A DNA stretch of 64,000 nucleotides from Mobula hypostoma (lineage: Eukaryota). Below, in pieces: positions 22,711 through 63,000 of this stretch; the first letter of the stretch is position 1, and each line of letters begins with the position of its first letter. The position numbers and the translations under genes were made by a program. Where the stretch lies: assembly GCF_963921235.1 (NCBI RefSeq), contig NC_086098.1, forward strand, positions 238,018,001 through 238,082,000. The letters are read 5' to 3'. The notes under the pieces were generated by a model, which saw only the letters and a list, made by a program, of their open reading frames with translations, was not told where the DNA came from and ran no database searches.

Positions 22711-22765
22711 ATGTTAATGGAAGTTTTGACCCTGTTCGTTGCCGTTCAGATGTTTCGTGTTTGTG
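22711..22765 (+). CDS. Gene A exon 1, signal peptide MLMEVLTLFVAVQMFRVC
   Basis: ATG at 22711, hydrophobic stretch, phase-1 donor G|gtgagt. Confidence 0.8.
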
Positions 22766-25700: not shown

Positions 25701-26912
25701 TTGGATTGTTTCCGGTTTTCCGGGCATTTTCTGAATTTCTCGTCTTCAATGTGTTGGTCTTTTATGATATATTTTTGATGTTTTGTGTTACCCACCAAGT
25801 CCTGTCTTGCTACAAGGAAGAGTTCTTCAACTCTCAGCCAGGCATTCGATATTTCCTTGTCGACATCTGGTCTGCTCGGATCATGGAAAGTCTTCCATGG
25901 AGGGTTATGCTCTTCCATTGGTTACTCTTTTCTTTTGTGATGATAATTCCTTCACTTTTCTGAATTGTGTTTTCATTGAAGTTTAGTATCCTTAAAAGTT
26001 TTATCTAACTGTTGTGTAGATTTTTCATATCTGTTATTCCTCTTCCTACTTTGTCCTAGTTAGTATTGATCTAAGTACGTTCAAGTGTACAAGATGTTTT
26101 CTCATATTTGTCATTTAAGTTCTTGTTTTTCCTTGTAAAGTTTCCGAATCGGTTTCAGACCAGATATTATACCAAATGAATACGTTAATATGGTACAGGG
26201 AAAATGTTATAATTTCACTTTGGGCGGAGGGGTGGAGATACGTCTCGACCAAAGGAGGTGTAAGGCCATCTTTCCCTCCACTAGCTTGCAGGTCAACCTT
26301 GGGCAAAGTGTAGCACCTGCTTGGGACGTGGGATTCCATGACGAGTGGTCTGTGTACCTGAGAAATATTCTCGTATTGGGGTTTATTGTCATATTTAGAA
26401 ATGAATAAGAAAGTCACGACACAGCTGAGAATTATTGGTGAATTTGAAATACTTCGCATAGCCCGACAGCTGGATTATTGGGGACTACTGTCATATTAGG
26501 ATTGCTGACATATGACATTTCTGTAAGTAATTATAAGTTGGCCAGACCAAATAATTGTTCCAATTCGTGCTCTTTCATTGCACAGGGACCCATCGTCAAT
26601 TGGCGACGCACCAAGTACACGGCACTGCGGCTCAGGTACGTATGGTTACTGCAACCCGTTGTAAGATTCACAAATTGGATGTTTGGGATTGGGTATATAA
26701 AGCCATACTTTACTAATCTGCTGCAGTTATTCAAGGGGTAACCTCGCTGAGGAAGTTTCGCACAGTCGTGACTGTTGCAAAATGGTAGATCATGCTGTTC
26801 GATATCTTTGATTGCCAATGTTTGCTATCCATTCCAGTCCCAAGCGCCGATCGTTTATGCCTCTCTCGAGTTCGGTGCATCAGCCTCTCCGCTCAGATGG
26901 GAAGCTGGTTGA
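22711..26912 (+). CDS. Gene A: non-rearranging VJ-C1-TM-ITIM Ig-superfamily receptor; join(22711-22765,23393-23716,23800-24120,24825-24914,26586-26635,26838-26912), 304 aa
   Basis: Six exons with GT-AG boundaries and compatible phases (1,1,1,1,0), 915 nt total, open to TGA at 26910-26912. Leader, V, C1, TM and ITIM are each recognisable. Confidence 0.88.
23393..23716 (+). CDS. Gene A exon 2, V-set domain with fused J-like G strand
   Basis: VELSC...VFWYKQ...VLELRDVHVEDSGSYYC SRRDSLLAKGPTLLVG; donor G|gtaaga. An alternative in-phase acceptor lies 6 nt downstream (23399). Confidence 0.92.
23800..24120 (+). CDS. Gene A exon 3, C1-set domain
   Basis: VHLVCLVGG...YWNISG...DQSYSVRSQVSVPVETW...CTC; acceptor ccag|, donor G|gtgagg; preceding intron only 83 nt. 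Confidence 0.92.
24825..24914 (+). CDS. Gene A exon 4, transmembrane GWCLPTAILLGILVFLAILIIIRISKERRS
   Basis: ctctctag| acceptor, 90 nt, phase 1-1, uncharged hydrophobic helix followed by basic stop-transfer residues. Confidence 0.88.
25150..26110 (-). mobile_element. R4/Dong-like non-LTR retrotransposon remnant (restriction-like endonuclease region)
   Basis: DVDKEISNAWL..ELF..QD...KYIIKD...RKC (ORF 25673-25918), then frameshifted IDIAIPN at 25461-25441. Confidence 0.65.
26586..26635 (+). CDS. Gene A exon 5, cytoplasmic GTHRQLATHQVHGTAAQ
   Basis: ctttcattgcacag| acceptor, CAG|gtacgt donor, 50 nt, phase 1-0, which bridges the TM and terminal exons in frame. Confidence 0.72.
26838..26912 (+). 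CDS. Gene A exon 6, terminal exon SQAPIVYASLEFGASASPLRWEAG* with ITIM
   Basis: tatccattccag| acceptor, phase 0; IVYASL at 26850-26867; possible ATTAAA polyA signal at 27164-27169. Confidence 0.8.
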   Translation, partial: SQAPIVYASLEFGASASPLRWEAG

Positions 26913-40065: not shown

Positions 40066-40131
40066 TCACTGAGGATAATATTCACTCTGCCTTTCCAGAT
40101 CAGTTCTATCAATCGCCAGCTGGGCGTAGAT
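40066..40131 (-). CDS. Gene B exon 6, terminal exon IYAQLAIDRTDLERQSEYYPQ*
   Basis: ccattcccttacag| acceptor, phase 0, tyrosine motifs, downstream AATAAA. An unseen small exon between 44404 and 40131 is not excluded. Confidence 0.72.
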   Translation of the reverse strand: MYAQLAIDRTDLERQSEYYPQ

Positions 40132-43100
40132 CTGTAAGGGAATGGCATGAGATTGGTTACGGTATCAATCCCCACCCTGCACTATTCCTCGCCAGGTTGC
40201 GTGTATGGCGCAACTTAATCACGCGTTAATTCCAAATCAAAAGAATGTGATATTATGGAGCAAAGAGTTTCATTCACTTTAATTTCCCTGATTACAACCA
40301 ACAAAAACACTCAGGGCCCTCTATTTCGGTCGCTGAACCTGCCCCTGTGATATCCTTCAGATTTCTATATTATTCTTCGGTCCCTGCTCTGTGCAATCTT
40401 GTCCTAGACCTAATATATCCATTGCATCCTACAGCCCATGGACGTCTTGTTGTCCCTTAAATACAGTATCTTTCGGCCTTACATCGTCCCTGTCTGCCTC
40501 CCCAGCTGACGCCACCAGCACCAACGCCCTTCCCTATCTATGTAACTCTCTGCAGTCTCTGCACTGCTCTCTGTGTAACTGTTTCGGCACCTGCACGGTA
40601 GTATATTTGCGTAACCCCTCCAGCCCGTATACCCCTCTGTGTGACCCCCGTCCGGCCCGCATACACATTGTGTGACCCCTTCAGCCAGTATACACTCCGT
40701 GTGACCCCTCCAGCCCGTATACCCCTCTGTGTGACCCCTCCAGCGCGTATACCCCTCTGTGTGACCCCTTCCTCCGGCCCGCATACACTCCGTGTGACCC
40801 CTCCAGCTCGTATACCCCTGTGTGACACCTCCAACCCCGAAACCCTCTATCTGAGTCACCCTTCTAAACCTTTCGCTATCTGTGTAATTCGTCCAAATCC
40901 TTAACCCCTTTATCAATTCAGCACACTCCAGTCTCTATCTCCTCGCCGATCTGTAACTCCTTTTTAAGTTGTTTCCCTACAACAGAATTCTCAACAAATT
41001 CCCTGTCCAATTCCATTCCCTGTTGTACTCTTTCTCTTCTTCCGCAACTCCACGACTTCCCAAGTTCTCTGCACTCCGCTGTTGCGGACTAACGCCAACA
41101 GTGTCTACGTTCGCTGCTGCGGGTCTGGCAACCCGACCGCTCCTCGTTTAAAGACCTCCCGCCGACAGGGAGGGGCCAGCTAACGGTCACACGATCGTGT
41201 ATGGTTTGGTGTTACATTCTGTCTATTGCCGTATCTGTAATTTGTTCTAAGACAATGAATCCTACACAAAGGTCTAAAAACAACACGGTTGTTGCAGGTA
41301 ATTTCAACTTCCCTAATATCAAGTGGGATCTTCTTAAAGAAAGATATTTATACAGTGCAACATTTGTTTGGTGAATCCTAAATGTTTTCTATATCAATGT
41401 GCAAATGTTCCAGAAAGAGGATGGGGTAAAATTGAAGCGAAGTTTGATAATGAGCTTGGCCTAGTGACTAACCTTTCACTGGGAGAACAATTATTATAAA
41501 TACCATTAAATTCGAGCAGGGTAAATTTGGAGAATATTGGACAGAAATTAGGGGACGTCAACTGGGAGTAGCTGTTTGGGCGCAAGTATCGAGACAGGCA
41601 GCGAATTTGGTCCAGAAGGAAAGGGAATCTTTTGGTTAAAAAAAAAGGTTTGCATAGCTAAAAGGAATCAATCAGAGTCCTTAAGAATTATAAAGAAGCT
41701 AGAAGCTAACTCGAAGTGGTGAGGAAGGCCAGAAAAGACCATGGAAGTTCATTGGGAAGTCGGATTAAAGTGAGATTCCGGGGGGTTCTATCCATACATG
41801 AAGAGCAAGACGATAACTAGGAGCGGGTAGGACAACTGAATGATAAATGAGGGAACATGTGCATAGATGTGAAGCATATGGTTCAGTGCTTAACATCAAG
41901 GAGGGAGGGAGTTAGATATGGCCCTTGCGGCTAAAGGGATCAGGGGCTATGGAGGGAAGGCTGGTACAGGGTTCTGAGTTGGATGATCAGCCATGATCAT
42001 ACTGAATAGCGGTGCAGGCTCGAAGGGCCGAATGGCCTACTCCTGCACCTATTTTCTATGTTTTAAGGAGAAAGATCTGGAAGGTGGCGAGATCAGTGTG
42101 GAGGGTACGAATTTGCTTGTGCAAACATGAAAAAAAGAATGAGGCATCACTGTGCCTCTTGAGGAACATTAAGTGGGTGTTTTGTTAGGATATACACCGG
42201 GTTATTGAGAGGGGCAAGAGATGAGATTGCTGGAGGCTTGACCAATATCTCAGTGTCCTCTCCAGCCACAGGCGATGACTCAGAGAACTGGTACGTCGCT
42301 AATGTTCCATTATTGTTGAAAGGAAATAGGGATAATCTTGAGAATTATAGACCGGCGAGTCTCACGTCAGTGGTAGGGAATTTACTGGAAATAATTCTTA
42401 ACGATCGGCTTTATGAGCGTTTGGAAAACCTGTCTTTGTGTTGGGCACGTCGTATCTTCCTAACTTGATTAAGAAGTTTGACGAAGTGACGATTGTGATT
42501 TCCTGTAGGGAGAGATATGGATGTTGTCCACATGGATTATAGTAAGGCGTTTGACAAGGTCCCATATAGGAGGATCAATCGGAAATTAAGATTGCATGGG
42601 TTCTGTGATGGGTTCAGAAAGGCTTTCCCATAGAAGACAGAGGGACTTATTCTAGCTGGAGGGCTATCCCCCGCAGGGATCTCCGCTGGGAACTCTGTTA
42701 TATGTGATATATATAAATGACCTGGATGAAAATGTAAATGGGTGGGTTAGTAAGTTTGCAGATGATACCAAAGTTGTGGACAGTATAGAAGGCGGCCAAA
42801 GGATACAGATCAGTTGCAGATACGGGAAAATGACAGAGAAGTTTAATCCCACCAAATGGGAACTGTTGCATTATAAAGGGATGGTACACTATTAATGACA
42901 AACCCTTAGCACCCGTGACGTACAGAGGGATTTTGGAGTTGAGTCCGTATCTCTCTGAAAGTGGCGACACAGCTTGTTAGGGTGGTCAGAAGGTACATGG
43001 AAATCTTTCCTTTATCTCTCAAGGAAATGAGTTCCAGAGTCGGGAAATGATGTTGGAGATTAACAGAACCAGCAGTTAGACTTTCCAGGCAGCATTGTAT

Positions 43101-46100
43101 TCAATTTTGGCCGACTCCGTTATAGGAAGGAAGTTGAGGCTTTGGATAAGTGTAGAAGACGTATTCTGGGATGCTGTCTGGAAAGTAGAGCATGTGCTAT
43201 AAGGAGAGTCTGGTGCTGCGTACGAATTCTTAGCATTGTCGATAATCCCTCCCATTCCTTCAACAATCTTTCTTATCCCCTACCATCAGGCAGGTGGTAC
43301 CGGAGTATTAAAACCAGAAATTTTAGGGTGTGGGACAGCTTCATCCCACAGGCCTTAAGACTACTAAATTCCCTGCCACCACCCACATCTCAGCACGTAT
43401 GAAGTGCCAATAGAGTTGCGCTGTTTATCTTTGACTTGTGCCGTATGCATCGTATTATTTTTTTTAATTTATTTGTGGTTATTATGGTTATATTACTTAA
43501 TGTGTGGTGTGTAAGTTATATGTACTGCGTTTTACCACTTGCTCTGGAGGAACGTTGTTTCGTTTGGCGATATACATGACAATAACCTGAACTTGAACTT
43601 GAACCTGAGCAAACTTGGGTTGTTTTCTCTGGAACCTCTGAGTCTGAGGGGTTATTTGACAGCGATCTACATAATATGAGAGGCACAGATAGAAAAGGTA
43701 GACAGTATAACTCTTCCACATTGTTGAAACGTGGCATGTGCTTAAGGTAAACTGGGGTAAGTTCAAATGAGACGTGCGGGTCACTTTTTTATCACAGAGA
43801 ATGGTAGAAGCTTGGAATTCGCTGCCCAAGGCATTGCTGGAGGCAAATGCGATAGAGCCGTTCTAGAGGATTTACGATAGGTACATAGATGTGCTGGAAA
43901 TTGAAGAATATGGATATTCTTCAAGCTGAAGTGATTAGTGCAGTTGGGTATTTGGTTACTAATTCAATTAGCTCAATAGAACATCGTAGGCTGAAGGACC
44001 TGTTCCCGTATGGTACCATTCTAAGCGCAAAGTAATTCTCTGCTTGTAAATGGCATTATCGGGTACAGGAGTGGAACCCGGTGTGGTATTCTGCTGTTGT
44101 AGCCCATTCACTTCAAAGTTCGACGCTTTGAGCGCTCAGAGACGTTCTTCTGTCACCGCTCTCGTAACACGTGATGATTTAAGTTACTTCCGCCTTCCTG
44201 TCAGCTTGAACCAGTCTGCCCATTCTCCTCCAACCTCTCTCATTAACAAGCACTTTTCGTCCAAATCACTGCCACTCACCAGATGTTGTCTGTTTTTTTT
44301 CAGACCAGCCACTGTAAGTTCTAGAGTCTGGTGTGCGTGAAAACACCAGGGTATCACATTAACGAGTAGGTTTACAGGTGTACCTGAAATTGAGTGTACT
44401 TACATCACGTTCTCGATTCTTTCGCCGGGTGATGGTGCTTTTGCTTGCCGTTTCTCCTTTTACTGATTGAAAGAGATGTTTAGATGTGAGTTTTTCTACA
44501 AAGGAATTTTTCACCGTTAGGCGAAAAGTTCAGGTCATGATTAGGTTAAGGCCAGCACGTTACCTGGTTCGCGTTCCTTCCGAAACTTCCTAATGGCCAC
44601 AGTGGTCACCCCTATAGCAAGGAACACGAGGGTCGCCGCCAGGCCAATTGCAATCATATGACAGAGTTGCCCCTGCAGGCTGTCTGAAGAACATAGAATC
44701 GACTTTCAATTGAAAGTAATTTACCATCAGTTCCAATCTGCATTTATTGGCCTGTGTGTCCTAATTACTCAACAGATTGTACATAAATTCAACGTATTGT
44801 CAGAATCAGAATCAGGTATTTGTCGCGGGACTTGCTGTTTCGCTGCGGCAGTAAATTGCAATGCGCAATAATCAAAACTATAAATTACAATAGGAAGTAT
44901 TTGTATGTGTCTGACTGTCTGACTGTCTGTCTGACTGTCTGTCTGTCTGTCTGCAAATTAAATATGTAGTGCAAAAAGAGAGGGAAATGGTGAGGTTGTG
45001 TTCATGGGTTAATTGTCCATTCAGATATCTGATGGCAGAGGGGAAGAAGCTGATCCTAAAACTTTGAGATTGTTTTTTTCAACTCTTATATTTCCATCTT
45101 GAGAGAAGCAATGCGCAGAGGACATGTCCTGGGTGATGGGGTCCATAATGATAGATGTCCTTTTTGAAACATGGCTTTTTGACGGTGTCCTGGATACTGA
45201 GGAGAGTGTTGGCCATGATGGAGCTAGCTGAGTTTACAATTGATATATTTAAAGCGGAGATTGATGGTTTCTCGATTAGCAAAAACGTCAGAGGTTTCAG
45301 GAAAAGGGAGGAGAATAGATTTGAGGGGGATAGTGAAGCAGCGACGATGGAATAGCGGAACAGACTCGATGAGCTGAATAACACTATGTCTTGTAGTATT
45401 ATATTCTAATATCTCGTTCCTTCTGAAAATACTGACTTCGGATCTCTACAACATTCTATCCAAATGGCTCCCTACTCGTCACAGGAACTGACCATTCGGC
45501 CCAACAACCCCATACTGGTACTTGGGCTCCTGGTGGCATTTACATGTTCTTCCACTTCTGCTGTAGTCTGACACTAGGTTGATACCGATAACGTTAACGC
45601 GCCTTACTACAACACTTCTTTCAGGGCTGGGGAGGGCGGTCTCCGATTATCCTTCGAGTACTGGCCAGTGTGTGTGTGTCACTCTGTCTCAGATATGCTC
45701 GCTCCACTCTACTGTAAAAGTAGCTCGTGACTCTAGGGACACGGTTTCGATCCAGTTCTTGAATGTCCTCTCTGTGAAGTGTGCACGTTTCCGCGTGATC
45801 ATGTGGCATTCCACCAGATATTCCCGCTGCCTCACAGTTAGGAAGGGCTTGCTGGTAACTATATGGCAACAAAGAATCAAAGCAAGTATGATTTCCGTTT
45901 CTATGTGGTAAGGTTAAAGGGGATACAAAGGTCAGAGATCTGGTGCAGGGTGTCTCGGGACCTGACTCGGCCAATAACAAGCACTGGATTGAGGATTGTC
46001 AGAGTCTGAGGGGATGTCATAGAAAGTGATCTGATGGGTCACTTTACTTTGCAACCTTTGTATCTGGGGTCTAATTTGGAATGTAATAATTCTTGGAAAT

Positions 46101-49100
46101 TTATAGCAATTAGTATCAGGTTTATTATTATCACATAAACCGAGATGCAGTGAAAAGTTTGCCATCCAGACAGATCATACGGCACATAAAACACCGAGTA
46201 GCACAAAACGAGAAATTGGTGAATTGCAGTTACAGAGAAGGCGCAGTGTAAGTGAAAACAAGATGCAAGAGCCGTGGCGACTAGATTTTGAGATGAATAG
46301 ATCACGGAAAGGAAATCTGTACAGCACAGTACAGGCGTAACGATGCTGTGCCGACCTTTTTACTCTAAAATCAGTGTAATCCTCCCCTTCTACATTGGTC
46401 TCCATTTTCCTTTCATCCATGTACCTATCTAAATCGTACAAGAGCTCCGTTCAAAGGGCCCATAGAGATATACATCCGGGCCAGGGCAGTTACTTGGTTT
46501 GAGTTTGAAATTTAGCTAACTTTTGAGATCATAGCAAATATGATGGGTAAAGGAGAACTGGAACCTGCAGGGTCGCGCACTTTCGGAAATGATCCATCTG
46601 TCACAGGTAGCTCACAAGTTAAGCGCGCCTAGCGTTGCGAAGCGGTGTATTGGCCTGGAGAGGGGAATGGTTAACCAACAGAGAGTCGGCGGTGAATGCG
46701 TCATTTTCGGGCCTGAACTGCTTATGTCTTGTGATGAGCTGAATGAAGGACTGCGTGTTTTGTAACTGGTTTCCCCCATTATATAAATTCTGAGGTGACT
46801 ATGGGGAAATTTATAGGGTCGTGCGGTAACGTATCGGTTAGCGAAACGACTTACGGTGCCGGCTGAAAGATTGAGGCTCGATTCCTGCTGCTTTGTAAAG
46901 AGATTGTACATTCTCCCGGTAACCCCGTGGGTTTCCTCCGGGTTCTCCGGTTTTCCCCCACATTCCAAGGACGTAGGGTTTGTGATAGTGAGTTACAGGC
47001 ATGCTATACTGCCGCCGGAAGCGTGGCGGCCGCAGCACACCTCGCTGATTTGATTAGACGGAAAAGACGCAGTTCACTGTATTTTTCGATGTACATGTAA
47101 CAGTTAAAGCTTATCAATCCAAAATTTATCGGACTCGTGTGTCGGGAGATGAGTACTTTCAAGGGCTCTACAACTAAGTGTTATTTATGAACTTATTTAT
47201 TATTTGTACAATTTGACTTTGTTTGTACATCGGTTATTTGTCAGTCCTCGTTATTCATAGCATTTCACAAATTCCGCTGTATTTCTCGCTTGTTCTACTG
47301 TGAATGTCTGTGATCTCAATGCCTTATATCGTGACATATACTTACTTTGATAATAAATGTACTTTGTATTACGAATAAAAAGTCAATGATAATAAATCTG
47401 ATACTATTTCTGATTCTGATTCTGAGCATTTCCCTCAGCAGAGTAGCCTAAACAAGAGGTGCCCATTTACAGTAAGTTTGGAGTGATGATAAAGGAACTG
47501 AGGGAAAGGGCTTCACCCGGAGAGCGGTGAGAGTTTCAATGATCGGTGGGGAGCGGGGAGAAGCTCTGCTCACATTTACGCAGTGCCTGAATGCGACAGT
47601 TGAGCCATTAGGGCCACGGAGACAGCGCTGGAGAGTGGGATTTAGCTCGATACTAGGCATAAACACAGAGGACCGAATGGCCTCGCGTCATAAAGCTGAA
47701 GGGAATCTCTAGTTTCTACGTTACCTTTCTGAGAAGACACAATGTCACTGACCAGATGTCCAGTGGCGCAAGTGCAGACGGCGCCGCTACGCCAACTTTC
47801 CGCCGGGATCTGGAAGCGGCTGCTAACGCTGTAGCCTCCGTCCGGATCAAATACCGGGGGATCAACGAGACCTTCTGTGATATTTCCCGATATGTTCCAG
47901 CGGATGTTCAGGGAATGGGAAGAGACGCCTCTCACCAAACACATCAAGGTCACCAGTTGCATCCGGGAAATTTCATCCGCTTGCGGCGCTAACAGGTATA
48001 TCGTGGGAGGCTGGGCTGAATGCGGAAAACACAACAACGCTGTTTTAGTTGGATGGCCAATTTTAATCACGGTTTCAAAAACAGGCTATTCTGGCCACCT
48101 TCTCCGTTCTGGCGGTCAGGTACATATCTGTGCCAATTCTAGTTTACAAGGCCCTCTGTCTGTGATAGTTCGTCTACATAACTGAGCGAGTAGCTGCATC
48201 GCTACCCTTCAGGGAGTGAGATCCCAACGCCCCTCGGACAGAAACATCCTTCTTCAAGCCTTCGCTATATCTCCCACCCCTCCTCTGTATAGGTTTATCG
48301 ATACATTTACTGGCGCCACGGAAGCAGAACGCTTAGCGCAACGCTATTACACTTCAAGGAGTCGGAGTTTGGAGTTCAATCCCGGCGTCCATTGTCAGGA
48401 GTTTGTCTCCGTGAAACGCCATTCCCCGTGGAAAGCGTGGGTTTCCTCAGAATGCTCCGGTTTCCTCGCACAGTCCAAAGACGTACTGGTTAATGGGTTA
48501 ATTGGTCATTGTATATTGTCCCGTGATTAGGCTCAGCTAATGTTCTACATTTCTATCAGCTTACTCTCTCCACCCCAAGGAAAGCAAAGCAACGCACACA
48601 ACCGATCCTCGCAAACGAAACGACATCGTTGTGATAGAGACGCACAGCGGGGAAGCAGACAATACAGCTCATCATATCGACCACAGTGGGCACCAATCCA
48701 CATTAATCCCATCTTCCTACACTTAGCCAAGACGCTTCTGTCTAACTCATGAATGAACACATCCAGACACCTCTTAGATGCTGTCAGCAAATCTGCTGCA
48801 ACCATTCTAGGACATACCCACAGTTGGTCCTCTTCAGATCCCCCCGAAACTCTTCTGCCTTATACTAAATCTATGCTCTCTTGTCTGTCTACCTCAAATG
48901 TGTGGAAGTGCCTCCTGCTGCTTACTTCGTGTTATGAAGTTGATCTATAACCTCCCTGCCTGTCTATTCAATAACCTGACTAATGAAAGGCCAATATCCA
49001 TTTGCCTTCATAATCACAGTATGTACGTGCGATGCCACCTTGCTGGATCACTGGATCTTGTAATCCAGGGTCCTTCTGTTCCTCAACCTCCACATTTCAG

Positions 49101-52100
49101 ATGTCTTTTCCTCATTAATCCTCCCAAACCGCAGCCCCTCGCGTTATTCTGGGTTAACATTTATAATCCATTTCAACAATACTTCAGTATCACCCCTTGG
49201 ATAAAGACTAACTTTCACACTATCCGCACCATCCACTATTTCGCCCTTCTTTCTCTTCTCCACAAATTTACTGATCTTGCTTCTTCTATCAAAACCTAAG
49301 CTATTCAAGAATATTTCGAATAGCAAAGGTGCTTGGAGAATCTTTTCGCCGCCTATTCTTGGGGAACACCGCTAGTGACAGGCATCCAATCTTCCCTTGC
49401 CCCTTGTTGCCAGTCTCATGCGGAATCGTTTGACAAATTGCCCTGGTCCATGTCTCTGTGGGACTTTGTCAGAGGCCTCACTGAAGTGCATGTAAAGCAT
49501 ACATTGATTGCTCTGTTCTCAATCATAGACTCGGCCAGCTCTTCAGGAATTTCGATCAGATTGCTCAGACATGCCCGGCTATTGACAGAGCCAGCTTGGC
49601 TGTCTCAGATTAGACCTTGTCACTCCAAGGTATTATTAAACCTGTCCCTCGGAGTTCAGTCCTTTAAGATCGCAACGACTGATGTTCGACTCATGGGTCT
49701 ATAATTGTCAGTCTTTTCCCTGGTATTCCAATTGGTACCTTCCAGGAGCCTCACATGTACCCAGCGAGTATTTACAATATCTCAGTTAAAGATCCAGCAA
49801 TCTCACAGTTTACTTGTCACAGACGTCTAGGATAGATCCGGTGATTTTCGACTTTTAAAGCTGCTACGGCTTCAAACATGTTTTCGTCCATTATTGAGAT
49901 TTACACCAAAAATTCACCTTTTCCTTCACTGAAGCCTTCATCTAAAAGGTGCACTCCCTTTGTGAATTCTGATGAAGCGTACTCATTTGGAGTCGATTGT
50001 CAAGGATGAGGTGACAGAGTACCTGGAGGCATATGACAAGATAGGCAGAACTCAGCATGGATTCCTCAAAGGAAAATCCTGCCTGACAAACCTATTACAA
50101 TTTTTTGAGGAAATTACAAGTAGGCTAGACAAAAGAGACGCAGTGGATGTTGTATATTTGGATTTTTAGAAAGCTTTTGACAAGGTACCACACATGAGTC
50201 CACTTCACAAGATAAGAGCCCATGGAATTATGGGAAAGGTACATACGTGGATAGAGCGTTAGCTGATTGGCAGGAAACAGAGTGAGAATAAAGGGATCCT
50301 ATTCTGGTTGGCTGCAGGTTACCAGTGGTGTTCCACAGGGGTCCGCGTTGGGGCCGCTTCTTTTTACATTGTACATCAACGATTTGGATTATGGAATTAA
50401 TGGCTTTGTGGCTAAGTTTATTGACGATACGAAGATAGGTGGAGGGGCCGGTAGTGCTGAGGAAACAGAGAGTCTGCAGAGAGACTTGGATAGATTGGAA
50501 GAATGGGCAAAGAAGTGGCAAATGAAATCCAATGTTGGAAAGTGTATGGTTATGCACTTTGGCAAAAGAAATAAACGGGCAGACTATTTAAATGGAGAAA
50601 GAATTCAAAGTTCTGAGATGCAACGGGACTTGAGAATCCTCGTACAGGATACCCTTAAGGTTAACCTCCAGGTTGAGTTGGTGGTGAAGAAGGCGAATGC
50701 AATGTTGGCATTCATTTCTAGAGGAATAGAGTATAGGAGCAGGGATGTGATGTTGAGGCTCTATAAGGCGCTGGTGAGGCCTCACTTGGAGTACTGTGGG
50801 CAGTTTTGGTCTCCTTATTTAAGAAAAGATGTGCTGACGGTGGAGAGGGTACAGAGAAGATTCACTAGAATGATTCCGGGAATGAGAGGGTTAACATCTG
50901 AGGAACGTTTGTCCACTCTTGGACTGCATTCCTTGGAGTTTAGAAGAATGAGGGGAGACCTCATAGAAACATTTCGAATGTTGAAAGGCATGGACAGAGT
51001 GGATGTGGCAAAGTTGTTTCCCATGATGGGGAGTCGAGTACGGAGGGCATGACTTAAGGATTGAAGGGCGCCCATTCAGAACAGAAATGCGAAGAAATTT
51101 TTTTAGTCAGAGGGTGGTGAATCCATGGAATTTATTGCCACGGGCAGCGGTGGAGACCAAGTCATTGGGTGTATTTAAGGAAGAGATTGATAGGTATCTG
51201 AGTAGCCAGGGCATCAAAGGTTATGGTGAGAAGGCGGGAGAGTGGGACTAAATGGGAAAATGGATCTGCTCATGATAAAATGGCGGAGCAGATTCGATGG
51301 GCCGAAAGGCCGGCTTCTGCTCCTTTGTGCTATGGTCTTATGGTCATTTATGACGACTCCAATATCTTCTGGCTCCAAAGTCAGATTCGCCCGTTGCTCG
51401 AAGTGGGCTCTAAATTCCATTTCCTTGGATGATCTTTCGCCCTTCATACACTTTTAGGTGGTTTGCTGATAAGCTTTAATCTGCTTGCCAGTGATATTTT
51501 GTTACTTTCCTTAATCTGTCTTTTAAGCATCACCTTGCGTTTTTATACCAGGAAGGGCTTCGCTCGTCTTTAACTTCCTATACATACCATCAGTTTCATT
51601 TTTTAATCTTTATCCATCCTCAAAAACCTTGTCGTCCATGGTTCTCTGAGATTATGACCTCTACCTTTTACCCTTACAGGAACATGTTGGCCCTGAGCTC
51701 TTCCCATTTCTCCTTCCATACATATATGGACTTACGAGCAAGCGGGTCCTCCCATTCAACTCTATCCAGGTCCTGTCTAATACTAATGAACACGGATTTG
51801 CCCAGTTGATTTCTGGTTCATGTGAACTTTTGCATTCCAAACCCACTTGAAATATGTGGAGTCCCGGCCACAATTTCAAAACCGCTCCCCAGCTGACACT
51901 TCGCCAAACTGACGACCCAGAAGGTTGAATCCTCAGCATCCTCTCCAGCGCAATCGCGCCCCTGCTATAGTTTAATGTCCAGGCTCCAATTTTAGTACAC
52001 GACTCCAATTTTCGTTTGATTAAAGTATTACACAGTTTGAATATACGCACTTCCTGCTCTTAGATTCTATTCCGCGGCAACTGAAGGCAAGTATTTGGTA

Positions 52101-53909
52101 TGTTCGCTTCACCACCTCGTCTCCAAGTCGCCTTTGGTACTGCCGTTCATTATATCTGTTCCCGACCTTCCTAAATACTTCGCCTCGAATTTCTCAGATT
52201 TAAACTTCATCTGCCATTGTTCTGACCACCTTTAAGGGAGGCACGGTAGCGTAGCGGTTATGGCAACTCGTTAGTGAGCCAACTGTAAGACTGTGGTTCA
52301 ATCCCCGTCGCTACCTGTAAGGGTTAGTACGACAATGCGTGGATTTCCTCCGAGTGCTCTGATTTCCTCCCACATTCTAAAGACGTGAAAATTAACTGGT
52401 ACTGTAATTGAAGGAGACTGATGCCATGCTGTATCTCTAAATCAGACTCAATTAACCTCATCAGTATCGCTCTGTAGCTCAAACCTAATCTCCGCACTTC
52501 CAACAGCATCGCAAATCCCCGTCTCATTTCTGAACCTACTTATTGTACTTTCTACGTACCATCTGGGCCCCAGCAAACGCCGCCATGTACAGTCCTATGC
52601 CCGGCAACGAAAGGAGTAGGGCTGGACATGGGATTCGCAACCCCATCCCGTAAAACTCCAGTGCTACAGTAACGCAAACAGAAGCTCCCCGGGAGAGGAA
52701 GGTTTTTCGAAAGTGGGCTTCACACGGGGACAATATGAAAGTGGCCCAGGATAGAAGACTCTGCGAGCTGCTTTCAGCACCTATGCCCAACAGGGGTGAT
52801 GGACTTTGAAAAGGAAATGTATGAAGTTGTTATGACGAGTTACCTGTGACCACCAGTTTGGATCCATTGCCGAACTCGCCATAGAGCTGGGCTGCGCAGA
52901 AGTAGATCCCAGAATCATTTCGCTGGACGTTTTCTATCACCAGGGAGTAAGTGGCTGATTTTTCGTCCACATGCCCCGAGAACCTTCCCTCTGCTTGCAC
53001 GAATCTGCCCACCCTGGCAACGAACTGCAGATGCCTTTGGTCGCTCCGTTTATACCAGTGTATAAAAGCAAGCACACCGAGGTCCCGGCTGCAGTTCAGG
53101 ACGGCCCGACCTCCGACACGGACGGTCTGAATCGGCGGAGACTGGAACAAGGCGGCCTGAGACACACAAACTGAAAAAAAGGAAGATTTAATCACAGATG
53201 TTATCCTCTCGCGGATGATACAGCGACTACAACACCGCGCCATCTTATTACGAATTGAGACTTTGGAACACAGAAAGAGCAGTATGCTCAGTCTGTACAG
53301 TTAGTTGTACTACCCGCTGCTCGAGTCCCATAATTCCTTTCTTAAAACTCCTTTGGAAATCATTCCAGTTATTTCATTCCCTGGTGGGGTAGGAATAAAT
53401 TTACCGCACCATCTCTCCCGAGTAATCTACCTTCCTAATTCTACCTTCTGCTTTCTCTGATTATCGGCTGTCGGTAGTTAAATTTAAATATCAGCATAGA
53501 ATATAGAACAGTACAGCACAGTAACGGGCCCTTTTGTGTCGAACCAACTAAATTAATAATCAAATGACCATCTAATCTTTTCTGCCGACACAACGGCTAT
53601 TTTGCTCGCATGAATGCGCCTGTCTAAACGTATTTTAAAAGTTCCTAATGTGTCTGGCTCTGCCACCACCCCAGCACTTTCCAGGCACCACCATTATCTA
53701 CCCCGCACATCTACTTCAAATCTACCCCCTTTCAACTTAACTGCATGCCCTCCGGTATTACAATCCCCTTATTTATTCTACCAAATCCCTTCAGTTAATT
53801 AACGATCAACATTCCCTTTGAACGAGCTGCACAAGCTCTTCTCTGCTGGAAACTCTGGTCACTTACCTTGCAGTAGGTAAGAGAGCGCGAAGACCGCGAA
53901 GCGTCTCAT
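40066..53909 (-). CDS. Gene B: non-rearranging VJ-C1-TM receptor with cytoplasmic tyrosine motifs; complement join(53909-53867,53170-52844,48015-47725,44683-44564,44462-44404,40131-40066), 301 aa
   Basis: Six exons with GT-AG boundaries and the same phases as gene A (1,1,1,1,0), 906 nt total, open to TGA; AATAAA on the minus strand at 39696-39691. Confidence 0.87.
40611..40836. repeat. Minisatellite, ~30-bp unit, ~7-8 copies
   Basis: gtgacccctccagcccgtatacccctctgt and variants. Confidence 0.9.
41280..44030 (+). mobile_element. Decayed CR1 pieces, with a younger CR1 3' end inserted at ~41890-42062
   Basis: GNFNFPNIKW-type EN motif, NYRPASLTS, KFADDTK. Confidence 0.75.
44070..44390 (-). mobile_element. 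Tc1-like remnant
   Basis: Same family as 17455-17600. Confidence 0.6.
44404..44462 (-). CDS. Gene B exon 5, cytoplasmic VKGETASKSTITRRKNRERD
   Basis: ctctttcaatcag| acceptor, |gtaagt donor, 59 nt, phase 1-0. Confidence 0.8.
44564..44683 (-). CDS. Gene B exon 4, transmembrane DSLQGQLCHMIAIGLAATLVFLAIGVTTVAIRKFRKEREP
   Basis: tatgttcttcag| acceptor, CAG|gtaacg donor, 120 nt; shares LVFLAI and KER with the gene A TM exon. Confidence 0.88.
44905..44953. repeat. (TCTG)n/(TGAC) microsatellite
   Basis: Direct inspection. Confidence 0.9.
45560..45990 (-). mobile_element. CR1 ORF1 N-terminal (zinc-finger/coiled-coil) remnant
   Basis: Decayed ETCTLHREDIQELDRNRV, resembling the CR1 ORF1 zinc-finger/coiled-coil segment. 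Confidence 0.45.
46816..47100 (+). mobile_element. tRNA-derived V-SINE (HE1-like)
   Basis: A/B-box-like head, then gtgggtttcctccgggttctccggttttcccccacattccaaggacgt core. Confidence 0.8.
47725..48015 (-). CDS. Gene B exon 3, C1-set domain
   Basis: QPPTIYLLAP...VTLMCLVRG...RWNISG...DGGYSVSSRFQIPAESW...CTC; 291 nt, phase 1-1. Confidence 0.92.
48312..48560 (+). mobile_element. tRNA-derived V-SINE (HE1-like)
   Basis: ggagttcaatccc B-box; gcgtgggtttcctc...cagtccaaagacgt core. Confidence 0.8.
48560..49800 (-). mobile_element. Old CR1 fragments
   Basis: Decayed NYRPMSLT and FDKVP-type motifs on the minus strand. Confidence 0.55.
49960..51345 (+). mobile_element. CR1 LINE RT 3' half
   Basis: ORF 50267-51052: GVPQGSALGPLLF, FIDDTK, RPHLEYCGQFWSP; CR1 3' end. 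Confidence 0.93.
52236..52440 (+). mobile_element. tRNA-derived V-SINE (HE1-like)
   Basis: ggcacggtagcgtagcggtta A-box, ggttcaatccc B-box. Confidence 0.8.
52844..53170 (-). CDS. Gene B exon 2, TCR-like V domain with canonical J motif in the same exon
   Basis: AVLNC...IHWYKR...GRFSG...YSLVIENVQRNDSGIYFC AAQLYGE FGNGSKLVVT; acceptor tttttttcag|, donor G|gtaact. Confidence 0.94.
53867..53909 (-). CDS. Gene B exon 1, signal peptide MRRFAVFALSYLLQ
   Basis: ATG at 53909, phase-1 donor AAG|gtaagt; continues as VCVSQA in exon 2. Confidence 0.88.
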
Positions 53910-60033: not shown

Positions 60034-63000
60034 GTAAGTCCAAGGTAACGGGTATCTGCTCTAAAAAAATCTCTAATACAGAGAGTTAACCCACACATTG
60101 ATTTCAATGCGTCAATCAAAGTAGATCAAGGCAAGGATCACGCATAAAAAATGCTGGCGAACGCAGCAGGCCAGGCAGCATCTATAGGAAGAGGTACAGT
60201 CGACGTTTCGAGCCGAGACCCTTCGTCAGGCAAGGATTAGAATTTGTGAGGCCTAGAAGGCTAAAGATCAAGTACTGGTAAGGGGACGAGTGTAGATGGA
60301 TATGGTATGGTCGGCATATACATTATGGGCCGAAGGGCCCGTTTCTGTGTTCTGTAACTCCAAAACAATATTCTGTATTCAATTTACTTGTTCTGTTAAA
60401 CCTGTCCACATATCTTTGGATACATTTTTAGTTCAATTGTTAAATTGCTATATTAATGTTCCCCATTCATTTTTTGCCAATTCACAGTTTAGATTCTGGC
60501 ACTCACCACCTGGAGTCTCCTCACAGCAGACAGCAGGTTTCCAAAGTCAGTCTGTTAGGTCTGTCAGCGAGTCACTAGGTAACCTTCCCCCGCCCCCCCC
60601 CCGTCTCTCTCTCTCCGCCCCCCCCCCAACTTCCCGCTCTCGCTCATACACACATATGTACACATATTTGCTCACAACCACACACATTCACCAGACATTA
60701 ATACGTAACACTTCAGTTGTGAATAACAAAAACAAACACAAGACACAGAAAGAGATATCACAAATATTTCTTATCCTGAGCATATTCCAGTGGTCTGTGT
60801 CTGCCACGTTCTGCTAACCAGCCTTCAGTCCGAAGGGCGTTAGTTTGTTCAACTTTGAGATTTTAAGTCTCAGTCTTGAACTACTGGCGTTAAGCTATAC
60901 TGGGGGAAGGGAACGTTGTGGGAGAGGAGATACTGAGGGAGTGTCACACCGTGGTTGCGGAGAGGAAGGAGTGCTGCACTTTGGGACTTGCGAAGTTTGA
61001 CTTTATTTTAGAACCATTCTCCCATCAACCTGTTGGAGGGGTTAGAGTGAGCAATGGTGGTAAATCAAAAGTTTGGGCCCAATATTTATCCTCTAGTCAT
61101 CACTAGAGCACTTACGAAGAGTCGCGTTGCTATCTGTGGGATCGTGCTGTGCATAAATTAGCCAATCCCGTGTCTAGCGCTTCCTGGGCTGTGGGGAGCT
61201 TCGGGGATTTCCAGTGCGTGGGGTTCTGGGGAAATTTTGGACTGCCATAACTTTGTCTTTTCTGTGCTGCCACCCCACGCACCTCCCCAGGTTTTCCGAG
61301 AGGATGGAATTGTGAGCGGCTACCGTAACCCACAGAGCTCTGCCAAGGACTGCCTCCTTAGCACCTTCCAAATGACGAACGAGACGCTCAACATCTGGAC
61401 CCATTTCCTCCCCACCTGGTACGTGTCAGAGCCAATCATGGCAGTCGGGGGAGATACCGCAGGCAGCAACAGCTCAGAGGCTCAGGGGCCCCTCTGCTCC
61501 GTGCTCGCATTCTCTTCTCCTCTCCCTGCCTCATCCTACCGGCGATAAGTAGATTCGCAAGTTTTGAGGAGAGCCCAACCTGCCTGCAAAGGGGCGGTGG
61601 GATTGATGAATAGCTGAGGTTCCTTTACAAAGTGGGAAAGTGTTAGGAGTGAAAGGCCATTTGTTATTAAACTAGAAAAAGTTAGAACTTTACTCCCTGC
61701 AGTGCAGGAGAATGGGGGGAGATTTGATAGAGTCATTGAAAATGACGAGGGATATAGATACGGCCAATGCAAGTAAGCTTTTACCCCTGAAGTTGGGTGA
61801 GACTAGAACTGGAGGCCATGGGTTAAGGGTGAAAGATGAAATACCTAAGGGGAACCTGAGGGGGAGCTTCTCCACTCAGCGAGTGGCGTGAGTGTGGAAT
61901 GAGATGCCAGCGGAAGTGGTGAGCTTGAGTCTGATTTTAAGACTTGAGAGAGGTTTGCATAACTACATACATGGATAGGAGGGGTGTGGAGGGTTGTTAC
62001 CTCGATGCAGTTCGATGAACAGAATGATAATTCGCAAACACCAGAAAGTCTACAGATGCTGGAAATCCAAAACAACGCACACAAAATGCTGGGAGAGTTC
62101 AGCAGCTCAGCCAGCATCTATGGAAATGTCCTGGACTGAAGGAGAGTCTCGGCCCGAATCGTCGACTCCTTACTCTTTCCATGGATACTGCCTAACTTGC
62201 TGAGTACATCCAACATGTTGTGTGTGTTTCAGTGCTGTTGTGCTTTATGGCCGTATGGACTGAGAACATGAACAAAATATGCAGGTACAGGTACAGCAGT
62301 GATTTTAACAGAATGACTTCCTTTACGGGAAGGGCTATGTGTATAAAAGGATGAAAGTTCTAATGATGCAGTGGAGGCTACCTCAGAAATATATTAAAGC
62401 TAACTTTGGATAGAGTTTTGTACAGTAAAGGGAATTAAAGTTCTGGGGAAAAGGCAGGTAGATGGAGATAAGACCATGGTCGGATCAGCCATGATTTTAT
62501 TGAATGGCGGAGCAGGCCCGACGAGCCAGGTGGCCTACTCCGGCTCCTAGTTCTTATGTTATGTTTCACACACACACACACACTATGCTGGAGGAACTCA
62601 GCAGGTCAGGTGGGAAATTAACTGTCAACGATTCATACATTGAGAGGTAAAGAAGAGCAGGAGGCTAGAAATGGAGGGCGAGCAGAGAATGAAGAGGCCG
62701 GCAGAGCTCACAGAGATATTGGAGAGTGTGTAGGATGAGGAGGGTACACAGATCTGAGGAGGTTACACTGACGTCAGTGGATTATCCTCAGGTCAAAGGG
62801 AGTTACACTGATATCAGAAGGGTTTACAGAGGTCGGAGGAGATTCCAGGGTCGGGAGGAATTAGAGGATAGAAGAGGTTTTACTGAGGTCGGAGGAGGTT
62901 ACAGAGGTCAAAGGGGGTTACAGGGCTCAGGGAGAGGTTTACAACAGTAGGATGAGATTATACTGAGGTTAGAGAGGTTATACTGGGGTCTAGGTGTGTT

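What the first reader, a model, noticed from the sequence alone, without database searches (positions are those of the whole stretch)
40066..53909. Gene B: TCR-like V with a perfect J motif fixed in the germline, spliced to C1-TM-cytoplasmic exons
Seen: ...DSGIYFC-AAQLYGE-FGNGSKLVVT|gt in one exon, with a 7-residue CDR3-equivalent, its own leader exon, and a 4.8-kb repeat-filled V-C intron. Known: cartilaginous fish carry germline-joined Ig genes attributed to RAG activity in the germ line. Inference: either such a joined VJ was captured by a signalling receptor, or it descends from the ancestral unsplit VJ exon.
Basis: partly seen in the sequence, partly recalled or inferred. Interest (0 to 1): 0.8.

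Follow-up and report, generated by a model that had tools for sequence, protein, structure and literature searches.

The report
Non-rearranging VJ-C1 receptor gene, devil ray
This is a real devil-ray gene for a membrane receptor shaped like one antibody light chain or T-cell-receptor chain whose variable region needs no DNA rearrangement. It is one copy of an old gene family shared by sharks, rays, chimaeras, lungfish, reptiles and birds, so it is not a recent shark oddity.

Summary
On the minus strand, six GT-AG exons (53909..40066) encode a 301-aa protein: split leader, one exon holding V plus a J-like strand (YFC-AAQLYGE-FGNGSKLVVT), one C1-set exon, a transmembrane exon and two cytoplasmic exons. 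The protein is identical to Mobula hypostoma LOC134337323, annotated as "uncharacterized".

It is not a lone germline-joined antigen receptor. It belongs to a multigene family of VJ-C1-TM-tyrosine-motif receptors found in rays, sharks, a chimaera, lungfish, turtles, crocodilians, lizards and birds. The VJ exon is unsplit in sawfish and birds too. The 7-residue CDR3-equivalent is constant, but only within a ray/skate clade (100/100 support); other members have 9 or 11 residues.

No antigen-receptor V scored as high as the family's lungfish or turtle members. This argues against recent capture of a RAG-joined shark Ig V.

The family is most likely PRARP (Fu et al. 2019, chicken), but I could not read that paper or obtain its sequences. 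Bird copies lie beside APH1A and a carbonic anhydrase gene (human 1q21); the ray copy lies beside a PAQR gene.

Gene B's tail motif is DIYAQL, not a canonical ITIM.

The scan had already noted two other copies of this family 0.7-0.8 Mb away in this genome.

The parts
53867..53909 (-). Leader exon: ATG at 53909, 43 nt (MRRFAVFALSYLLQ + 1 nt), donor GTAAGT. This is a split leader with a phase-1 intron.
   Evidence: identical to residues 1-14 of P0154
52844..53170 (-). Single VJ exon (327 nt): end of the leader, a V-set domain and a J-like G strand (...DSGIYFC AAQLYGE FGNGSKLVVT), donor G|gtaact. The J motif contains an N-glycosylation sequon (NGS).
   Evidence: (V-set 2.4e-13, profile 1-109/109)
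47725..48015 (-). C1-set exon (291 nt): ...LVTLMCLVRG...IRWNISGNITEG...YSVSSRFQIPAESWRSGAVCTCATGH...
   Evidence: C1-set 6.1e-10; closest to IgG CH3, IgA CH3, CL
44564..44683 (-). Stalk and transmembrane exon (120 nt): DSLQGQLC HMIAIGLAATLVFLAIGVTTVAI RKFRKEREP. It has a membrane-proximal Cys and no charged residue inside the helix.
   Evidence: (helix 223-257)
44404..44462 (-). Cytoplasmic exon (59 nt): VKGETASKSTITRRKNRERD
   Evidence: found by aligning the ray orthologs
40066..40131 (-). Last exon: IYAQLAIDRTDLERQSEYYPQ plus stop. With the preceding Asp it forms the tyrosine motif DIYAQL.
48016..52843 (-). V-C intron, 4,828 bp. It contains a LINE-type reverse-transcriptase fragment at 50267-51049 on the + strand.
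22711..26912 (+). Gene A, a neighbouring paralog lying tail-to-tail with gene B. Its C1 exon (23778-24140) is 53% identical to gene B's C1 over 62 aligned residues. Its V is very divergent and lacks FGxG. Its tail carries IVYASL, a canonical ITIM.
61162..61545 (+). First coding exon of the divergently transcribed neighbour, a PAQR/HlyIII-family gene (341-aa product in the public annotation).
   Evidence: PF03006 on the annotated product; weak HlyIII hit on this exon

Best explanation
Gene B is an intact, germline-encoded, non-rearranging type I membrane receptor: leader, VJ, C1, stalk Cys, TM, and a short tail with one conserved tyrosine motif. It is the ray/skate ortholog group of an ancient jawed-vertebrate multigene family. 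[quoted passage not shown]

Shown: the gene model; the domain identities; family membership; the unsplit VJ exon in distant species; purifying selection.

Inferred: the V domain binds an unknown ligand through its CDR-like loops. The chains pair through the conserved membrane-proximal cysteine. Ligand binding leads to phosphorylation of the tail tyrosine, which recruits SH2-domain proteins. In most family members the motif is ITIM/ITSM-like (S/T-x-Y-A-x-L/V), which points to an inhibitory or regulatory immune receptor. In the ray clade that includes gene B, the -2 residue is Asp or Glu, so its signalling partner may differ.
For: The six-exon model gives a product identical to the annotated Mobula hypostoma protein. 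V-set and C1-set domains are confirmed. The AlphaFold model has mean pLDDT 81.6; its best matches are Ig light chains and TCR chains over both domains (Foldseek E about 1e-14, VIA Z about 14), ahead of SIRP and butyrophilin. Homologs with the same layout occur in 15 or more elasmobranch species, Callorhinchus, Protopterus, turtles, alligators, lizards and birds. V and J sit in one exon in Pristis, Gavia and Balearica. In the V tree, gene B sits in an 11-member ray/skate clade (100/100) nested in a 17-member elasmobranch clade (95/94). dN/dS against the sawfish gene is 0.34 for V and 0.57 for C1. Variation among the ray copies concentrates in the CDR1-, CDR2- and CDR3-equivalent stretches. The stalk Cys and the terminal x-Y-A-x-L motif are conserved. 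No charged residue lies in the TM. No RSS was found. PRARP link: PMC10751288 cites Fu et al. 2019 and names PRARP among single-exon VJ genes. By my memory of that abstract, PRARPs are VJ-C1-TM-ITIM genes of bony fish to birds, with a degenerate C1 in birds. The bird members here do lack a Pfam C1-set hit.
Against: I could not read the PRARP paper or obtain a PRARP sequence, so the family name rests on a citation, my memory and matching architecture. Gene B's own motif (DIYAQL) fails the ITIM/ITSM consensus at position -2. No expression, dimerisation or ligand data were available here. The V tree contains few true antigen-receptor V domains and none from cartilaginous fish, and its backbone is unresolved.
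Confidence: 0.8

Rival explanations
1. A rearranging Ig or TCR V-J pair was joined in the germ line by RAG in the cartilaginous-fish lineage, as in germline-joined shark Ig clusters, and was then fused to a signalling receptor.
For: Germline-joined Ig genes are well known in cartilaginous fish (stated for IgL lambda in PMC12227049). By sequence and fold, the V and C1 are closest to antigen-receptor domains.
Against: The same unsplit VJ exon and the same layout occur in birds and sawfish, and homologs occur in lungfish and reptiles. The V is closer to lungfish and turtle family members (62-63 bits) than to any antigen-receptor V seen (45 bits or less). CDR3-equivalent length is fixed within clades. 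No RSS remnants were found. A joining event before the common ancestor of jawed vertebrates cannot be told apart from 'never split'.
Confidence: 0.05
2. Gene B belongs to the UrIg/UrIg2 lineage, the non-rearranging shark 'antibodies' of the MHC and of the antigen-receptor complex, rather than to a separate family.
For: It shares the split leader, the single VJ exon and antigen-receptor-like C1 domains, and occurs in elasmobranchs (PMC12227049).
Against: UrIg has three C1 domains and is secreted. UrIg2 has nine to eleven C domains. Both are reported only in elasmobranchs, and they lie in the MHC and beside IgH/TCR alpha-delta. Gene B has one C1 and a tyrosine-motif tail, lies beside a PAQR gene, and has tetrapod homologs. 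No UrIg or UrIg2 sequence was available for direct comparison.
Confidence: 0.07
3. The receptor is real, but gene B's tail does not act as an inhibitory motif. DIYAQL would serve as a YxxL endocytosis signal or as a docking site for an activating kinase.
For: All nine ray/skate-clade members with a complete tail have Asp or Glu at -2 ([DE][IT]YAQL), whereas sharks, turtles and neighbouring gene A keep S/T/I at -2. The change has been conserved since rays, sawfish and electric rays diverged, which suggests a shift in function rather than decay.
Against: No partner is known. The rest of the family points to ITIM/ITSM-type signalling. The TM has no charged residue for pairing with ITAM adaptors.
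Confidence: 0.3
4. Gene B is a decaying copy with no function.
For: It sits among many transposon fragments. Its C-terminal extension (TDLERQSEYYPQ) is absent from the other ray copies.
Against: The reading frame is open and all splice sites are canonical. The canonical Cys/Trp residues are invariant or nearly invariant across 45 aligned family members and are present in gene B. dN/dS is below 1. The public annotation models it as a protein-coding gene with isoforms.
Confidence: 0.03

Closest known systems
[quoted passage not shown]
   Same: Non-rearranging single VJ exon with a canonical J-like motif, followed by a C1 domain (degenerate in birds), TM and an ITIM-type tail. The genes come in adjacent copies, and disulfide-linked dimers are reported. 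The reptile and bird homologs found here fit that description.
   Different: To my knowledge no cartilaginous-fish members have been described. Gene B's clade has a 7-residue CDR3-equivalent and a non-canonical DIYAQL motif. The identification is by architecture, citation and memory, not by sequence comparison with a named PRARP.
UrIg and UrIg2 (Flajnik et al. 2023, 2025)
   Same: Elasmobranch, non-rearranging, split leader, single VJ exon, antigen-receptor-like C1 domains. [quoted passage not shown]
   Different: They have 3 or 9-11 C domains against one here. UrIg is secreted. They have no tyrosine-motif tail. They lie in the MHC and beside IgH/TCR alpha-delta, not beside PAQR/APH1A-type markers. 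They are reported as elasmobranch-only, whereas this family reaches birds.
NITR (novel immune-type receptors of teleosts)
   Same: Germline-encoded multigene family with a V domain carrying a J-like FGxGTxLxV strand, a TM and ITIM tails. Teleost proteins with ...FGNGTKL... J strands were among the nearest non-family V hits. They are unnamed in the databases, and calling them NITRs rests on my recollection.
   Different: The second NITR domain, when present, is I-type, not C1. NITRs are teleost-specific.
SIRP family
   Same: V domain with a J-like strand, C1-set domains, ITIM tail. SIRP alpha/beta appear among the structural matches.
   Different: SIRPs have V-C1-C1 and several ITIMs. They rank below Ig light chains and TCR beta in both structure searches. 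No SIRP appears among the 60 listed sequence hits.
Ig light chains, TCR chains and germline-joined shark Ig clusters
   Same: V-J-C1 order, split leader, phase-1 introns. These are the best structural and sequence matches.
   Different: Gene B has no separate V and J segments and no RSS. The TM lacks the basic residues of TCR chains. The tail carries a tyrosine motif. The V is closer to tetrapod family members than to any antigen-receptor V.

Membership tests
PRARP | V and a canonical J-like motif encoded in one exon, no rearrangement | tested here: met
   VJ exon 53170-52844 ends FGNGSKLVVT|gt. No RSS in 18 kb.
PRARP | C1-set domain directly after the VJ domain (degenerate in birds) | tested here: met
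   C1-set 6.1e-10. The bird homologs have no Pfam C1-set hit.
PRARP | TM region and a cytoplasmic ITIM | tested here: inconclusive
   TM helix 223-257. The tail motif DIYAQL fails the consensus at -2. Paralogs and gene A carry SVYARL, TLYARL, IVYASL; turtles carry TEYAAV.
PRARP | Sequence homology to chicken PRARPA/B | not testable with these tools
   No named PRARP sequence could be obtained, and the paper is not held. Bird homologs of the family were found.
UrIg / UrIg2 | Three (UrIg) or nine or more (UrIg2) C1-type domains | tested here: not met
   One C1 exon lies between the VJ and TM exons. The 301-aa product is identical to the annotated protein.
UrIg / UrIg2 | Location in the MHC class III region or beside IgH/TCR alpha-delta/PSMB5 | tested here: not met
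   The annotated neighbour within the 10 kb examined upstream is a PAQR/HlyIII gene, and a paralog (gene A) lies in the same window. Bird homologs lie beside Aph-1 and carbonic anhydrase genes.
Rearranging or germline-joined Ig/TCR | Separate V and J segments with RSS, or close kinship to a rearranging V clade | tested here: not met
   No RSS. Antigen-receptor V domains score 45 bits or less, against 62 bits or more for lungfish and turtle family members. Cartilaginous-fish Ig/TCR V sequences were not in the tree.
TCR chain | Basic residue(s) within the TM for CD3 assembly and a very short tail | tested here: not met
   TM HMIAIGLAATLVFLAIGVTTVAI has no Lys/Arg/Asp/Glu. The tail is about 50 residues and carries a tyrosine motif.
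NITR | V (with J) followed by an I-type domain or none; teleost gene clusters | tested here: not met
   The second domain is C1-set. The host is a ray.
SIRP | V-C1-C1 ectodomain | tested here: not met
   Only one C1 exon.

The most novel reading that the evidence does not exclude
The family is the 1q21-22-paralogon counterpart of UrIg (MHC) and UrIg2 (antigen-receptor complex). On that reading, a VJ-C1 cassette with a split leader already existed before the two genome duplications and survives unsplit on at least three MHC paralogons, and this is the only one of the three retained from chimaeras to birds. Within it, the ray/skate clade would have changed function, through a 4-residue CDR3 deletion and loss of the ITIM -2 residue.
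Probability: 0.3. Interest if true: 0.7.

Novelty: new member of a known kind. Interest (0 to 1): 0.45.

Why it matters
Unsplit VJ-C1 genes are the best living models for the gene that the RAG transposon invaded. The recent shark literature (PMC12227049) presents UrIg and UrIg2 as elasmobranch-only relics and does not discuss this family. Showing that a VJ-C1-TM-tyrosine-motif family runs from chimaeras and rays to birds gives a third comparison point for reconstructing the pre-RAG receptor. The same holds for its position beside 1q21-22 markers in both a ray and birds. It is also a receptor that can be studied functionally in chicken as well as in sharks. For genome annotation, dozens of these genes are misnamed 'immunoglobulin kappa/lambda/gamma-like' or 'T cell receptor-like'.

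Tried and rejected
- Word-indexed protein search with the V exon alone: one candidate, useless because of the length filter.
- Literature searches for PRARP: hits were mostly prostatectomy papers. Only PMC10751288 cites the Fu 2019 paper.
- The Fu 2019, Ohta 2019, Flajnik 2023 and Dornburg & Yoder 2022 papers are not held. An 'AgR-like' search returned only bacterial quorum-sensing papers.
No tool gave me named cartilaginous-fish antigen-receptor V sequences, and I did not type any from memory. The V tree has only human, mouse and lizard Ig/TCR V domains, teleost NITR-like V domains and a second shark V family as outgroups, and its backbone is unresolved.
- UrIg2 did not appear among the 50 rows shown of the structure searches, so no direct comparison was made.
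- My first scan for ITIM motifs between the TM exon and the 3' end missed the real motif, because it spans an exon junction. The ortholog-guided model fixed this.
- I considered SIRP, NITR, TCR and UrIg membership and rejected each on a tested defining feature.
Full report
**Observation**

Reading that strand, I found:
- a leader exon with ATG at 53909 and donor GTAAGT;
- a 327-nt exon that carries the last residues of the leader, a complete V domain and a J-like strand (…DSGIYFC AAQLYGE FGNGSKLVVT), ending G|gtaact;
- a C1 exon and a transmembrane exon, each with a polypyrimidine-AG acceptor and a GT donor;
- a last exon ending in TGA at 40068-40066.

A short cytoplasmic exon (44462-44404) was located by aligning ray orthologs to the window.

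The six exons are 53909-53867, 53170-52844, 48015-47725, 44683-44564, 44462-44404 and 40131-40066. They have phases 1,1,1,1,0 and translate to 301 residues identical to P0154, "uncharacterized protein LOC134337323 isoform X1" of Mobula hypostoma. The public record places that gene on a 252-Mb chromosome of assembly GCA_963921235.1 with a span of 13,844 bp, the same as 40066-53909.

Pfam finds a V-set domain over the full profile (2.4e-13), so the J strand is an integral G strand. It also finds a C1-set domain (6.1e-10).

The V-C intron is 4,828 bp. It contains a reverse-transcriptase fragment on the other strand, and about 18% of it has diverged copies elsewhere in the window.
- The J motif has Ser where the antigen-receptor consensus has Thr.
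- The intron is only partly made of recognisable repeats.

**What the domains resemble**

By sequence against solved structures:
- The V is about equally close to Ig kappa/lambda VL and to TCR alpha/delta V. All 60 listed hits are antibodies or TCRs.
- The C1 is closest to IgG CH3, IgA CH3 and light-chain constant domains.

An AlphaFold model built on a 45-member family alignment has mean pLDDT 81.6. It shows two Ig domains, a TM helix at 223-257 and a disordered tail.
- Foldseek against the PDB, and a second look with VIA-align, put Ig light chains and TCR beta/gamma chains on top over both domains (E about 1e-14, Z about 14, 22-28% identity).
- In reviewed AlphaFold entries the order is TCR beta, Ig lambda, then SIRP alpha, butyrophilin and CD200.

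So the ectodomain is antigen-receptor-like, not specifically TCR-like. It is nearer to antigen receptors than to SIRP, CD8-type or B7-type V domains in the searches I could run.

**It is one copy of a large, old family**

A profile-free search of 1.84 billion representative proteins with the V exon gave ray proteins at 79-81% identity. It then gave a series of single-V proteins of 200-410 residues at 38-53% identity. Look-ups and a further search name the sources:
- Rays, skates and sawfish: Hypanus sabinus (at least five copies on one chromosome), Hemitrygon, Mobula birostris, Pristis, Narcine, Amblyraja, Leucoraja.
- Sharks: Heterodontus, Mustelus, Cetorhinus, Rhincodon, Scyliorhinus, Carcharodon, Chiloscyllium, Pristiophorus.
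- Chimaera: Callorhinchus.
- Bony vertebrates: the lungfish Protopterus and the turtle Pelodiscus.

A profile of the lungfish, turtle and two further sauropsid-like members of unrecorded origin found 101 more proteins in turtles, alligators, lizards and birds. None has a curated name. The automatic names include "immunoglobulin kappa light chain-like", "Ig heavy chain Mem5-like" and "M1-specific T cell receptor beta chain-like".

All full-length members share the same plan: leader, V with FGNG[ST]xLx[VI], C1, a cysteine at the membrane boundary, TM, and a tail ending in x-Y-A-x-L/V.

**Family features measured**

Of 119 members with a recognisable J strand, 95 carry an N-x-S/T sequon inside it (FGNGS or FGNGT). 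I take this as a family signature. Whether the site is glycosylated, and what that would do to V-V pairing, is untested.

The CDR3-equivalent has these lengths:
- 7 residues in 12 cartilaginous-fish members, all from rays, skates and sawfish.
- 11 residues in the other 26 cartilaginous-fish members.
- 9 or 11 residues in nearly all bony-vertebrate members.

In a maximum-likelihood V tree, gene B lies in an 11-member ray/skate clade with 100/100 support. That clade is nested in a 17-member elasmobranch clade (95/94) whose shark members have 11-residue loops. The 7-residue loop is therefore a 4-residue shortening at the base of the batoids, and its length has stayed constant since.

Among the ray copies, variation is concentrated in the CDR1-, CDR2- and CDR3-equivalent stretches, while the framework is conserved. 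Against the sawfish gene, dN/dS is 0.34 for V and 0.57 for C1. That is purifying selection of the moderate kind usual for immune receptors.

**Unsplit exon or germline joining?**

Four results bear on this:
- The sawfish ortholog has the same exon plan, with V and J in one exon. In two birds (Gavia, Balearica) the V and the FGNGTRLVVT strand are also contiguous in one exon.
- In the large search, every single-domain hit at or above the list's cut-off (58 bits) is a family member, including chimaera, lungfish and turtle (58-63 bits).
- The best named antigen-receptor V domains I could score reach 36-45 bits.
- There is no heptamer/nonamer pair resembling an RSS in the 18 kb around the gene.

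A recent capture of a RAG-joined shark Ig or TCR VJ is therefore very unlikely. The VJ exon has been unsplit at least since the common ancestor of cartilaginous and bony vertebrates. Sequence alone cannot distinguish 'never split' from 'joined before that ancestor'.

The tree's backbone among the family, the teleost NITR-like V domains, a second shark V family and the few Ig/TCR V domains is unresolved. I had no cartilaginous-fish Ig/TCR V sequences to add. This is the main gap.

**Genomic setting**

In the window:
- Gene B is tail-to-tail with gene A (22711-26912, + strand). Gene A's C1 is 53% identical to gene B's over 62 aligned residues and 38-48% identical to other family members' C1. Its V is very divergent and lacks FGxG. 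Its tail has a canonical ITIM, IVYASL.
- About 6 kb upstream of gene B, on the other strand, the public annotation has a 341-residue HlyIII/PAQR protein. Its first coding exon is at 61162-61545. I confirmed the PAQR family but not that it is PAQR6.

In the birds, the family copies lie next to an Aph-1 gene and a carbonic anhydrase gene. A lizard gene model fuses a family member with APH-1A. By established human gene maps, APH1A-CA14 is at 1q21.2 and PAQR6 at 1q22. The ray and bird locations are therefore consistent with one conserved region, which the literature counts among the MHC paralogous regions. This is suggestive, not proven, because I saw only 10-kb flanks.

Earlier notes of this scan report two more copies of the same kind of gene 0.7-0.8 Mb away in this genome.

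**What is known**

UrIg (MHC-linked, VJ plus three C1 domains, secreted) and UrIg2 (beside IgH/TCR alpha-delta, VJ plus nine to eleven C domains, TM) are the published non-rearranging shark genes. They are described as retained in elasmobranchs and in no other vertebrates (PMC12227049). Gene B fails two of their defining features, domain number and location, and its family is not elasmobranch-only.

PMC10751288 names PRARP among single-exon VJ genes and cites Fu et al. [quoted passage not shown] I could not read that paper. From my memory of its abstract, PRARPs have these features:
- a V domain with a canonical J-like segment;
- a V-C1 structure in bony fish, amphibians and reptiles, with a degenerate C1 in birds;
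- a TM and a potential ITIM;
- formation of disulfide-linked homo- or heterodimers.

The reptile and bird proteins found here fit this point by point, including the loss of a recognisable C1 in birds. I therefore file gene B as a cartilaginous-fish member of that family, at about 70% confidence for the name. To my knowledge, cartilaginous-fish members have not been described. The accessible papers do not mention them.

**Likely mechanism**

Shown: an intact type I membrane protein with an antigen-receptor-like VJ-C1 ectodomain, five N-glycosylation sequons, a membrane-boundary cysteine, an uncharged TM and a roughly 50-residue tail.

Inferred:
- ligand binding by the CDR-like face of a germline-encoded V;
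- pairing through the stalk cysteine, possibly with the neighbouring paralog;
- signalling through the single conserved tail tyrosine.

In most members the motif is ITIM/ITSM-like: SVYARL and TLYARL in sharks, TEYAAV in turtles and alligators. This predicts recruitment of SH2 phosphatases or SAP-type adaptors and an inhibitory or regulatory role.

In gene B's clade every complete tail reads [DE][IT]YAQL. This fails the consensus at -2, yet it is conserved among rays, sawfish and an electric ray. A changed partner or an endocytic YxxL role is a live alternative, at about 30%.

**Verdict**

The gene is an ordinary, intact member of a widespread but neglected family, probably PRARP, and not a singular find. 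Its value lies in two things. It extends that family to rays, sharks and chimaeras, and it places copies beside 1q21-22 markers. Both bear on models of how antigen receptors arose.

Noticed in passing
P0053, P0290-P0296, P0017, P0067, P0005 (Scyliorhinus torazame, Hemiscyllium ocellatum, Chiloscyllium); not in the window: A second shark family of germline V domains with J-like strands (...YYCSVWG(D/S)ISG(N/D)G(S/T)QLNV). It has two or more tandem V domains followed by a TM (V-V-TM, 237-300 aa). Members are auto-named 'Ig kappa light chain-like' or 'perlecan-like'. It forms its own starred clade in the V tree.
   Followed up: partly
L003:1240-1467 (+), Pristis pectinata, 9 kb upstream of the gene B ortholog: Another C1-like exon (...DTDQTYRLSSYLRVSAAAW) lies beside the sawfish ortholog, and a further V-set gene lies 5 kb downstream. 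The sawfish locus therefore also holds several IgSF genes.
   Followed up: no
window 40614-40864: A tandem repeat with 29/93/120-nt units (2-7 copies, 76-84% matches) lies in the last intron of gene B. Translated, it gave a long spurious open frame.
   Followed up: no
window 22711-26912 (+): Gene A's V domain lacks the FGxG bulge (…CSRRDSLLAKGPTLLVGG) and has extra cysteines, on a very long branch. Its C1 is a normal family member, and its V-C intron is only about 100 bp.
   Followed up: partly
window 40066-40131 (-): Gene B's last exon runs 11-12 residues beyond the point where the other ray copies stop (…AIDRTDLERQSEYYPQ against …AIDTN). This adds two more tyrosines that are unique to this copy among the family tails listed.
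   Followed up: no
P0272 (Sceloporus undulatus), P0185 (Platysternon): Some public gene models fuse family members to neighbouring genes, giving names such as 'gamma-secretase subunit APH-1A isoform X1' and 'rho GDP-dissociation inhibitor 1'. These are annotation errors, but they reveal the neighbours.
   Followed up: no
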